DNA of 64,000 nucleotides, taken from Octopus sinensis. Its lineage: Eukaryota. Below the pieces are notes generated by a model. That model was not told the origin of the DNA and made no database searches. It saw only the letters and a program-made list of their open reading frames with translations. The translations under genes and the position numbers were made by a program. Positions 6,011 through 62,965 of the stretch are shown here, in pieces. The stretch's first letter is position 1; every line of letters begins with the position of its first letter. The stretch lies in the NCBI RefSeq assembly GCF_006345805.1, contig NC_043021.1, positions 10,850,001 through 10,914,000 on the forward strand. Direction: 5' to 3'.

Positions 6011-6148
6011 CTGTTTGGCAGTTGTTGCCCTCATATCCAGCCGCACATCCACCACTGGAGCAAACACCAGTCTCACGGCTACATCTGCTGTTGTTTGCAC
6101 AATGACATGTACTGTGGCAGTTTGGTCCGAATTTACCAGTAACACATG
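6011..6148 (-). CDS. EGF-repeat exon 25: [46 protein letters not shown]
   Basis: tacAG acceptor, GTTGGT donor, 138 nt. Confidence 0.88.

Positions 6149-62965: not shown

What the first reader, a model, noticed from the sequence alone, without database searches (positions are those of the whole stretch)
6011..62965. Array of 25 interchangeable 138-nt phase-1 EGF exon cassettes: candidate combinatorial-splicing receptor system
Seen: all 25 exons have identical length and phase, all 200 Cys are retained, there are no stops, and splice sites are intact despite introns saturated with TEs. Any subset can be spliced in frame. Known: tandem 8-Cys EGF repeats typify MEGF10/CED-1/Draper/SCARF phagocytic and adhesion receptors, and exon-array diversification is established for arthropod Dscam. 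Inference: this is either a very long constitutive EGF rod (at least 1150 aa) or a cassette system producing many ectodomain isoforms, possibly for immune or self recognition in a cephalopod. Donor strength varies widely (GTAAGT, GTTGGT, GTTAGT, GTGGGT, GTATGG, GCAAGT), which is compatible with regulated skipping.
Basis: partly seen in the sequence, partly recalled or inferred. Interest (0 to 1): 0.78.

Follow-up and report, generated by a model that had tools for sequence, protein, structure and literature searches.

The report
Giant octopus multi-EGF membrane protein gene
The window holds the middle 25 of about 60 one-domain exons of a very large, apparently unannotated octopus cell-surface gene; its uniform exon design is inherited from an old mollusc gene family, not evidence of a special splicing system, though some in-frame exon skipping is plausible.

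Summary
On the minus strand there are exactly 25 exons of 138 nt, phase 1-1, with AG acceptors and 24 GT plus 1 GC donors. Each has 8 Cys and none has a stop. They are exons 3-27 of a roughly 60-exon EGF array spanning about 153 kb. The gene reads: N-terminal EGF, F5/8 type C (discoidin) domain, 59 more EGF units, and one transmembrane exon. No phosphatase tail was found.

The closest relatives are mollusc F5/8C + EGF-array receptors, many of which are receptor tyrosine phosphatases. A chiton relative has the same 138-nt phase-1 EGF exons, so uniform length and phase are ancestral. The exons are old paralogues under purifying selection (dN/dS about 0.29), with no site showing significant diversifying selection. 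Introns share no motif, so there is no Dscam-type docking/selector pattern.

No transcript or annotated product of this gene was found, so its splicing is untested. RefSeq isoforms of an octopus paralogue, and of oyster, mussel, clam, scallop and sea-cucumber relatives, differ by whole EGF units. Limited in-frame skipping is therefore family-typical.

Verdict: a new, unusually long member of a known kind. A regulated combinatorial repertoire is not supported, but it is not excluded.

The parts
62828..62965 (-). EGF exon, array no. 3 (first in window); 138 nt, phase 1-1, donor GTAAGT
60449..60586 (-). EGF exon no. 4; donor GTGGGT
53971..54108 (-). EGF exon no. 5 (divergent unit CPHGTFG...); donor GTAAGT
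52573..52710 (-). EGF exon no. 6 (divergent unit); weak donor GTATGG
51297..51434 (-). EGF exon no. 7; donor GTGAGT
50530..50667 (-). EGF exon no. 8; GC donor GCAAGT
49402..49539 (-). EGF exon no. 9; member of the near-identical set 9/12/14/15
47447..47584 (-). EGF exon no. 10; donor GTAAGT
46441..46578 (-). EGF exon no. 11; donor GTAAGT
44878..45015 (-). EGF exon no. 12; near-identical set 9/12/14/15
42771..42908 (-). EGF exon no. 13; donor GTAGGT
42106..42243 (-). EGF exon no. 14; near-identical set 9/12/14/15
40006..40143 (-). EGF exon no. 15; near-identical set; followed by the 15.3-kb intron
24717..40005 (-). 15,289-nt intron between exons 15 and 16; holds a DDE_3 transposase ORF (27908-28534), a reverse-transcriptase-like ORF without a Pfam hit (36606-37151) and a 268-bp x3 tandem repeat (26092-26894)
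24579..24716 (-). EGF exon no. 16; donor GTAAGT
23730..23867 (-). EGF exon no. 17; donor GTAAGT
22673..22810 (-). EGF exon no. 18; donor GTTAGT
20543..20680 (-). EGF exon no. 19; donor GTAAGT
18278..18415 (-). EGF exon no. 20; donor GTAAGT
15693..15830 (-). EGF exon no. 21; donor GTAAGT
14374..14511 (-). EGF exon no. 22; donor GTAAGT
12817..12954 (-). EGF exon no. 23; donor GTTGGT
10879..11016 (-). EGF exon no. 24; donor GTAAAT
9489..9626 (-). EGF exon no. 25; donor GTTAGT
7507..7644 (-). EGF exon no. 26; donor GTGAGT
6011..6148 (-). EGF exon no. 27 (last in window); donor GTTGGT; followed by a 10-kb intron that runs off the window

Best explanation
The 25 exons are the middle part of one giant gene on the minus strand of contig C25. 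The gene spans at least 170 kb and encodes roughly 3,100 aa. It encodes a type I membrane protein made of an N-terminal EGF-like piece, one EGF, an F5/8 type C (discoidin) domain, 59 further single-exon 8-Cys EGF units and a single transmembrane exon. It belongs to the mollusc family of F5/8C + EGF-array receptors, which databases label MEGF6/10/11-like, draper-like or CED-1-like. Many members are receptor tyrosine phosphatases. The rule 'one EGF = one 138-nt phase 1-1 exon' is the family's ancestral gene structure. The array grew by tandem exon duplication long ago, has been kept under purifying selection, and shows occasional exon-limited gene conversion. Most likely (inferred, not shown) the exons are included by default through ordinary exon definition, giving a long rod-like ectodomain. 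Individual exons or runs of exons would occasionally be skipped in frame, as annotated for paralogues and homologues. In that case the isoforms differ mainly in rod length, not in a large programmed recognition repertoire.
For: Shown. There are 60 in-phase EGF exons on one strand, 57 of 138 nt and 3 of 144 nt, with 480/480 Cys and no stop. No decayed copies exist anywhere in the 264 kb examined. The non-EGF N-terminal parts of paralogue XP_036365016.1 match only upstream of the array: an EGF-like piece at C25:10944566-10944718 and discoidin pieces at 10924098-10924337 and 10920798-10920899. Pfam F5_F8_type_C_2 scores 28.3 bits there, just over its 27.8-bit cut-off. A transmembrane exon lies 1.07 kb downstream of exon 60 and joins in frame (NLLLLVGVPVVAFFILLVIVITIIVCCK). 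The closest proteins are O. sinensis F5/8C-EGF-PTP receptors (39-48% identity), a Liolophura RPTP (41%), and many bivalve and gastropod 'MEGF/draper/CED-1-like' proteins with F5/8C. The chiton gene for P0003 has 16 EGF exons of exactly 138 nt, phase 1-1. Synonymous divergence (dS) to the nearest paralogous exon is mostly 0.3 to above 1, with dN/dS of 0.1-0.3. Tree-based global dN/dS is 0.285, and no codon shows a significant nonsynonymous excess. Exon homology stops 10-45 nt into the introns. Donors match the U1 consensus at a mean of 8 of 9 positions in the window, and 19 of the 57 array exons scored are GTAAGT. RefSeq isoforms of O. sinensis LOC115219456 lack exactly 1, 1, 2, 3 or 4 EGF units. 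The same pattern appears in Dreissena, Apostichopus, Mercenaria and Pecten and in at least 24 Saccostrea isoforms. Drosophila Draper isoforms with 15 versus 5 EGF repeats are established (PMC2724735).
Against: No transcript, EST-like fragment or annotated protein of this gene was found in three length windows of a 5.8-billion-protein set, or in a profile search of 1.84 billion representatives. Expression, exon inclusion and the true 5' and 3' ends are therefore inferred. The cytoplasmic tail is undetermined. A TAA follows ...IVCCK directly but overlaps a good donor, CAA|GTAAGT. No tail homology was seen in the 44 kb downstream. The signal-peptide exon is only a candidate. The isoforms of relatives are computational RefSeq models, and in repetitive arrays some could come from mis-mapped reads. 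Several exons have weak donors (GTATGG, GTGGGT, GCAAGT, GTTGGT), which would suit regulated skipping.
Confidence: 0.62

Rival explanations
1. Regulated combinatorial cassette system. Many of the roughly 58 interchangeable exons are included or skipped in a controlled, cell-specific way, producing a large functional repertoire of ectodomains for immune or self recognition.
For: All exons are symmetric phase 1-1, so any subset stays in frame. Donor strength varies. Annotated isoforms of an octopus paralogue and of bivalve and echinoderm homologues drop 1-4 EGF units at many different positions, with at least 24 isoforms in Saccostrea.
Against: Symmetry and uniform length are ancestral, since they are identical in a chiton gene. 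They are also generic for shuffled modules (PMC5400394). No shared intronic control element was found within 300 nt of the exons. No codon shows significant diversifying selection among units, and variation sits at a few relaxed loop positions. Average splice sites are strong. No transcript data exist for this gene. The isoform counts in relatives are tens, not thousands, and come from models.
Confidence: 0.12
2. Dscam-type mutually exclusive array. One exon, or a few, out of the cluster is chosen per transcript through competing RNA pairings.
For: Only the superficial resemblance of a long tandem array of similar exons.
Against: Each exon encodes a whole independent domain, not an alternative version of one segment, and the array makes up almost the entire ectodomain. 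No conserved selector-like sequence lies upstream or downstream of the exons, and information content is near zero beyond the splice signals. Dscam docking/selector architecture is described in PMC3535345 and PMC7430681. Homologues are annotated with most units included together.
Confidence: 0.02
3. Non-functional relic, or several separate genes, or an assembly artefact instead of one working gene.
For: The product is absent from all protein sets searched, and no tail or verified start was found.
Against: All 60 of 60 exons are intact with 480/480 Cys, intact splice sites and dN/dS of about 0.29, despite synonymous divergence near saturation. There are no pseudo-exons. Exons and introns are all distinct, so the array is not a collapsed or inflated repeat. 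N-terminal and transmembrane parts occur once each, at the two ends.
Confidence: 0.05

Closest known systems
Octopus sinensis F5/8C-EGF-array receptor tyrosine phosphatases (XP_036365016.1 'MEGF6'; LOC115219456 isoforms X1-X8)
   Same: N-terminal EGF, F5/8 type C domain, then an array of 8-Cys EGF units ending in '...CQ(E/K)EK' and a single transmembrane segment. Identity is 39-48% over the array. Their annotated isoforms differ by whole EGF units.
   Different: They have about 10-20 EGF units of two alternating types (43 and 45 aa) and a PTP domain. This gene has about 60 units, mostly of one 46-aa type with C6-x4-C7 spacing (CSSGGC). No PTP domain was found on its contig within megabases.
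Liolophura sinensis (chiton) 'MEGF6' RPTP, P0003, locus L051
   Same: EGF units of the same subtype at 41% identity, each on one exon of exactly 138 nt, phase 1-1.
   Different: It has 16-17 units and PTP domains. Its introns are 92-97% identical to one another, which indicates very recent block duplication. The octopus introns share no homology.
Bivalve F5/8C + EGF 'MEGF6/10/11-like' genes (Saccostrea cucullata XP_062618942 and isoforms; Ostrea edulis XP_056003593.1; Dreissena LOC127871517)
   Same: Discoidin plus long arrays of 8-Cys EGF units, with many annotated isoforms that lack 1-4 whole units. The Ostrea protein has the most matched units in the library, 42.
   Different: Lower identity, unit lengths of 47-50 aa, and fewer units than here.
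Draper / CED-1 / MEGF10 engulfment receptors
   Same: Type I membrane proteins with tandem 8-Cys EGF repeats. Draper isoforms differ in EGF number, 15 versus 5 (PMC2724735). They appear as hits at about 34% identity.
   Different: Those have an N-terminal EMI domain and a tail with NPxY and YxxL motifs. This gene has a discoidin domain instead, no EMI match, and no identified tail.
Tie2 and SCARF1 EGF domains; Pfam EGF_STAB1-2 (PF24887)
   Same: Best solved-structure sequence matches are Tie2 2gy5 at E=4e-6 and SCARF1 8hna at E=0.05. The best Pfam family scores 76 bits over 7 units.
   Different: Tie2 has only 3 such EGFs, set among Ig and FN3 domains with a kinase tail. The similarity is at the level of the module only.
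Arthropod Dscam1 exon clusters
   Same: A tandem array of similar exons in a cell-surface gene.
   Different: Dscam exons are mutually exclusive alternatives for one half-domain, chosen through docking/selector RNA pairing. Here the exons are whole serial domains, and no shared intronic element exists.

Membership tests
Mollusc F5/8C + EGF-array type I receptors (MEGF6/10/11-like, many with PTP) | F5/8 type C (discoidin) domain near the N-terminus, flanked by EGF units | tested here: met
   tblastn with XP_036365016.1 hits discoidin pieces between EGF exons 1 and 2 (E=8e-11). Pfam PF22633 scores 28.3 bits against a 27.8-bit cut-off on the two pieces joined by X. The middle exon of the domain was not located.
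Mollusc F5/8C + EGF-array type I receptors (MEGF6/10/11-like, many with PTP) | Array of 8-Cys EGF units, one unit per phase 1-1 exon | tested here: met
   60 exons. The same 138-nt phase-1 exons occur in the chiton homologue.
Mollusc F5/8C + EGF-array type I receptors (MEGF6/10/11-like, many with PTP) | Single transmembrane segment directly after the last EGF | tested here: met
   An in-frame 83-nt exon at C25:10774172-10774254, with mean hydropathy of 3.24 over 21 residues. This is a prediction from sequence only.
Receptor-type protein tyrosine phosphatase subfamily of the above | Cytoplasmic PTP (Y_phosphatase) domain | tested here: not met
   No PTP match in the 45 kb downstream. The nearest PTP hits on contig C25 are about 4.4-4.5 Mb away. 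The gene is not filed as an RPTP.
Draper / CED-1 / MEGF10 | N-terminal EMI domain | tested here: not met
   No EMI hit in the Pfam scans of the N-terminal pieces; a discoidin domain is present instead. The N-terminus is incompletely reconstructed.
Draper / CED-1 / MEGF10 | Cytoplasmic NPxY and YxxL/ITAM-like motifs | tested here: inconclusive
   The tail was not found. Either the protein ends 3 residues after the membrane (TAA) or it splices on at CAA|GTAAGT.
Stabilin-type EGF module (Pfam PF24887 EGF_STAB1-2) | Score above the curated cut-off | tested here: met
   76 bits against a 27-bit cut-off for 7 units. A single unit alone scores 23.9 bits, below the cut-off.
Dscam-type mutually exclusive exon cluster | Selector sequences next to each variable exon, complementary to a docking site | tested here: not met
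   No conserved positions beyond the splice signals in 60 nt of flank. No k-mer is shared by more than 11 of 57 flanks of 300 nt, and the top ones are TA/TG microsatellite. Structure-level pairing was not searched.
Dscam-type mutually exclusive exon cluster | Alternative exons encode the same segment of one domain between constant exons, with one chosen per mRNA | tested here: not met
   Each exon is a complete EGF module in series, and relatives are annotated with many units together. Usage in this gene's own mRNA cannot be tested with these tools.
Alternative cassette-exon system (any kind) | Transcripts with non-adjacent exon-exon junctions | not testable with these tools
   No transcript or fragment of this gene is in the protein collections. 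The only evidence is indirect, from isoform models of relatives.

The most novel reading that the evidence does not exclude
The roughly 58 symmetric EGF exons are used as a regulated cassette library. Different cells or tissues would include different subsets, giving a very large set of ectodomains that differ in length and composition on a minimal (possibly tail-less) membrane anchor. That would be a cephalopod counterpart, by exon skipping, of arthropod Dscam diversity. The many whole-unit isoforms annotated in oyster, mussel and octopus relatives would then be the visible tip of a family-wide mechanism.
Probability: 0.1. Interest if true: 0.8.

Novelty: new member of a known kind. Interest (0 to 1): 0.36.

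Why it matters
The locus is a clean example of how a single-module exon can be amplified to about 60 copies and then held intact for a long time. It appears to be missing from current octopus protein sets, so gene catalogues under-count such giant repeat genes. If long-read cDNA showed programmed use of subsets of these exons, it would be a new way for a mollusc to diversify a surface receptor. If not, it is a very long rod-like adhesion or recognition protein of a known family. Across the family, the recurring whole-EGF isoforms in RefSeq models deserve a direct test.

Tried and rejected
- Three searches of the 5.8-billion-protein set used the 60-exon model, a 7-exon piece and the 25-exon window protein. 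None returned this gene's own product, an ortholog or a transcript fragment; only paralogues and distant relatives came back.
- A profile of the 25 units against 1.84 billion representatives gave a best score of 919 bits (amphioxus). At most 42 matched units occurred in one protein, so the product is not in the library.
- tblastn of the tails of 125 related membrane proteins, and of PTP domains, against the 44-45 kb downstream found nothing credible.
- The signal-peptide scan gave only one plausible, unverified candidate.
- AlphaFold of one unit reached pLDDT 70.9, and Foldseek against the PDB gave no hit because the domain is too small.
- Rfam and tRNA scans of the window found nothing.
- The look-up of encoding contigs returned no record for the O. 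sinensis and O. vulgaris paralogues, because records near the window's genome are left out.
The paralogue loci on contig C14, and flanks beyond C25:10730001-10994000, could therefore not be read.
- Literature searches found no paper on this gene or on EGF-cassette splicing in molluscs.
- Rejected readings: a Dscam-like mechanism, a pseudogene, and an assembly artefact. The reasons are given under the rival explanations.

Full report
**Observation.** On the minus strand of the window there are exactly 25 units of the form AG | 138 nt | GT or GC. Read in phase 1, each gives a 45-46-residue 8-Cys module with consensus [45 protein letters not shown]. Concatenated, they read 1149 aa with 200 Cys and no stop. 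Twenty-four donors are GT and one is GC. Apart from offset versions of the true exons, the scan returned only two unrelated hits. A relaxed tblastn found no additional or decayed EGF exon.

**Extent and gene model.** The window is C25:10850001-10914000 of a 2.72-Gb genome. I fetched 264 kb around it. The same scan then finds 60 EGF exons on the minus strand, from 10928762 down to 10775327. Fifty-seven are 138 nt and three are 144 nt, all are phase 1-1, and together they carry 480 Cys with no stop over 2765 aa. The window holds numbers 3 to 27.

I used the O. sinensis paralogue XP_036365016.1 as a guide for the non-EGF parts.
- Its N-terminal parts match only upstream of the array. There is an EGF-like piece at 10944566-10944718.
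- There are F5/8 type C (discoidin) pieces at 10924098-10924337 and 10920798-10920899, between EGF exons 1 and 2.
- Pfam F5_F8_type_C_2 reaches 28.3 bits on the joined pieces, just above its 27.8-bit cut-off.
- An 83-nt exon lies 1.07 kb downstream of exon 60 and joins in frame. It reads NLLLLVGVPVVAFFILLVIVITIIVCCK, a transmembrane segment.

A TAA follows the final K directly but overlaps a good donor, CAA|GTAAGT. The protein therefore either ends three residues inside the cell or continues into exons I could not find. No PTP domain lies in the 45 kb downstream, and the nearest PTP-like hits on this contig are about 4.4-4.5 Mb away. A candidate signal-peptide exon sits near 10962833 but is unverified.

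**What family it belongs to.** Pfam places the units in EGF_STAB1-2, at 76 bits for seven units. The best solved-structure matches by sequence are the Tie2 EGF region and SCARF1. The closest full proteins fall into three groups.
- Octopus sinensis receptors with the same N-terminal EGF + discoidin + EGF-array + transmembrane plan plus a PTP domain, at 39-48% identity.
- A chiton RPTP at 41% identity.
- Many bivalve and gastropod proteins with F5/8C that databases call MEGF6/10/11-like, draper-like or CED-1-like.

Amphioxus proteins carry very similar units (51-60% identity) next to many other domains. This EGF subtype is therefore an old and mobile module.

**Why uniform length and phase are not special.** I obtained the chiton gene for P0003 as locus L051. 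Sixteen of its EGF units are each on one exon of exactly 138 nt, phase 1-1, with AG/GT borders. The design is therefore inherited from before chitons and cephalopods split. A bias to one intron phase and symmetric exons is also a recognised mark of exon-shuffled modular genes (Patthy, as cited in PMC5400394). 'Any subset can be spliced in frame' is true. It is also true of the whole family.

**History of the array.**
- The nearest paralogous exons mostly differ by a synonymous divergence (dS) of 0.3 to above 1, with dN/dS of 0.1-0.3.
- A tree-based count over exons 3-45 gives a global dN/dS of 0.285. No codon has a significant excess of amino-acid changes. Variation sits at a few near-neutral loop positions (2-3, 8, 11-12, 24-25, 39, 41), while the Cys and Gly scaffold is invariant.
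- Exon homology stops 10-45 nt into the introns. In the chiton gene, by contrast, the introns are 92-97% identical to each other.
- The octopus array is therefore old and each exon has been kept individually.
- Exons 9, 12, 14 and 15 are 91-98% identical inside the exon but unalignable beyond about 20-30 nt of flank, which fits exon-limited gene conversion.
- Exons 46-59 alternate between two unit types, as in the paralogues. The central block is an expansion of one type.

**Tests bearing on splicing.**
- Beyond the pyrimidine tract and the first 6-8 nt of the donor, the flanks carry no information.
- No k-mer is shared by more than 11 of 57 flanks of 300 nt, and the top ones are microsatellite. 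There is thus no Dscam-like selector pattern of the kind described in PMC3535345 and PMC7430681.
- Donors are strong on average. They match 8 of 9 U1-consensus positions in the window, and 19 of the 57 array exons scored are GTAAGT. A handful are weak.

Direct evidence is missing. No annotated product or transcript fragment of this gene appeared in any length window of the 5.8-billion-protein set. A profile of the 25 units against 1.84 billion representatives peaks at 919 bits, with at most 42 matched units in one protein, an Ostrea edulis MEGF6. A product with about 60 units would score far higher. The gene therefore looks unannotated, and for this unit type it is the longest array seen in that library.

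**Indirect evidence for skipping.** RefSeq isoforms X4-X8 of the O. sinensis paralogue LOC115219456 differ from X1 by loss of exactly 1, 1, 2, 3 or 4 EGF units (43, 43, 88, 131 and 176 aa). The same holds for relatives in other species.

| Species | Size of segments missing in isoforms (aa) |
|---|---|
| Dreissena | 45, 46, 138, 184 |
| Apostichopus | 47, 47, 94 |
| Mercenaria | 45 |
| Pecten | 100 |
| Saccostrea cucullata (at least 24 isoforms, at a dozen positions) | 47-197 |

Draper isoforms with 15 versus 5 EGF repeats are experimentally known (PMC2724735). These RefSeq isoforms are computational models, and some may reflect read mis-mapping in repeats. Even so, they make limited in-frame EGF skipping a family-typical expectation instead of a novelty of this locus.

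**Most likely mechanism.**
- Shown: one large, intact, selectively maintained gene for a type I membrane protein with a discoidin domain and about 60 serial EGF modules.
- Inferred: default inclusion of the exons, giving a very long, stiff, disulfide-rich rod that holds the discoidin head far from the membrane. I base the rod shape on general knowledge of tandem EGF arrays.
- Inferred: occasional in-frame skipping that changes rod length.
- Inferred only from relatives: a role in adhesion or recognition. This is weak, because no ligand, tail or expression data exist.

**Rivals.**
- A regulated combinatorial repertoire is possible but lacks positive support. The symmetry is ancestral, no shared intronic control element or diversifying selection was found, and there are no transcripts. 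I give it about 0.1.
- A Dscam-type exclusive choice is disfavoured by the architecture and by the absence of selector motifs.
- A relic, a set of several genes, or an assembly artefact is disfavoured by 60 of 60 intact and distinct exons with a single N-terminal part and a single transmembrane end.

**Limits.** I could not read the paralogue loci on contig C14 or extend the flanks further. Records of the window's own genome and its near relatives are left out of the look-up of encoding contigs. The species is inferred to be an octopus close to O. sinensis, from the closest proteins and the genome size. It was not proven.

**Verdict.** This is a new, exceptionally long and apparently unannotated member of a known mollusc receptor family. 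Its exon uniformity is ordinary for that family. Interest is moderate to low unless cDNA shows programmed exon choice.

Noticed in passing
window 49402-49539, 44878-45015, 42106-42243, 40006-40143 (minus): Four EGF exons (array nos. 9, 12, 14, 15) are 91-98% identical to each other, yet their flanking introns are unalignable beyond about 20-30 nt. This looks like exon-limited gene conversion, not recent duplication.
   Followed up: partly
C25:10774172-10774254 (outside window, about 76 kb downstream on the minus strand): Predicted transmembrane exon. A TAA stop follows ...IVCCK immediately but overlaps a strong donor, CAA|GTAAGT. The protein may therefore be nearly tail-less (CCK, possibly palmitoylated) or may splice on to exons that were not found.
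   Followed up: partly
C25:10775327-10801661 (outside window), EGF exons 46-59: The membrane-proximal exons alternate between two unit types (period 2: identity 0.61-0.63 at offsets 2 and 4, against 0.51 at odd offsets), as in the PTP-bearing paralogues. The central block, including the window, is an expansion of one type.
   Followed up: partly
L051 (Liolophura sinensis CM072722.1:13060754-13131605): The chiton homologue has 16 EGF exons of exactly 138 nt, phase 1-1. Its introns are 92-97% identical in an alternating 1.16/1.69-kb pattern, which indicates a very recent two-exon block amplification.
   Followed up: yes
Relatives: O. sinensis LOC115219456; Saccostrea cucullata XP_062618942 and others; Dreissena LOC127871517; an Apostichopus japonicus RPTP-like gene: RefSeq isoform sets differ by deletion of 1-4 whole 8-Cys EGF units at many positions, with at least 24 isoforms in the oyster. 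This is family-wide in-frame EGF-cassette variation in the annotation. I found no paper describing it.
   Followed up: partly
window 27908-28534 (minus) and 36606-37151 (minus): A Tc1/mariner-type DDE_3 transposase ORF (Pfam 55.5 bits) and a reverse-transcriptase-like ORF without a Pfam hit lie inside the 15.3-kb intron between exons 15 and 16.
   Followed up: partly
window 26092-26894; 1-715; 46963-47427; 19836-20127: Intronic tandem repeats: 268 bp x3 (98% match), (TA)n of about 715 bp, (ATG)n of about 465 bp, and a 20-bp unit x14.
   Followed up: no
window 1780-1899, 3088-3252, 55164-55289 (+); 54352-54549, 56007-56138 (-): A short interspersed element recurs in several introns on both strands. 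Its spurious ORF reads [18 protein letters not shown] followed by a TG/TA microsatellite. No tRNA or Rfam match.
   Followed up: no
C25:~10962833 (outside window, upstream): Candidate signal-peptide exon (MPRLKSVRFFSVAIIPSFSLLFLLILMLVDVVAQQ, phase-1 donor GTGAGT), about 18 kb upstream of the first recognisable coding exon. Unverified.
   Followed up: no
Amphioxus proteins P0002, P0026, P0054 and others: Branchiostoma EGF units (…CSSGGCEAGWKGNNCQT) are more similar to the octopus units (51-60% identity) than the octopus's own paralogues are (39-48%). They occur beside Ig, FN3, fibrinogen, kinase, PTP and GPCR domains, so the module is ancient and promiscuous.
   Followed up: no
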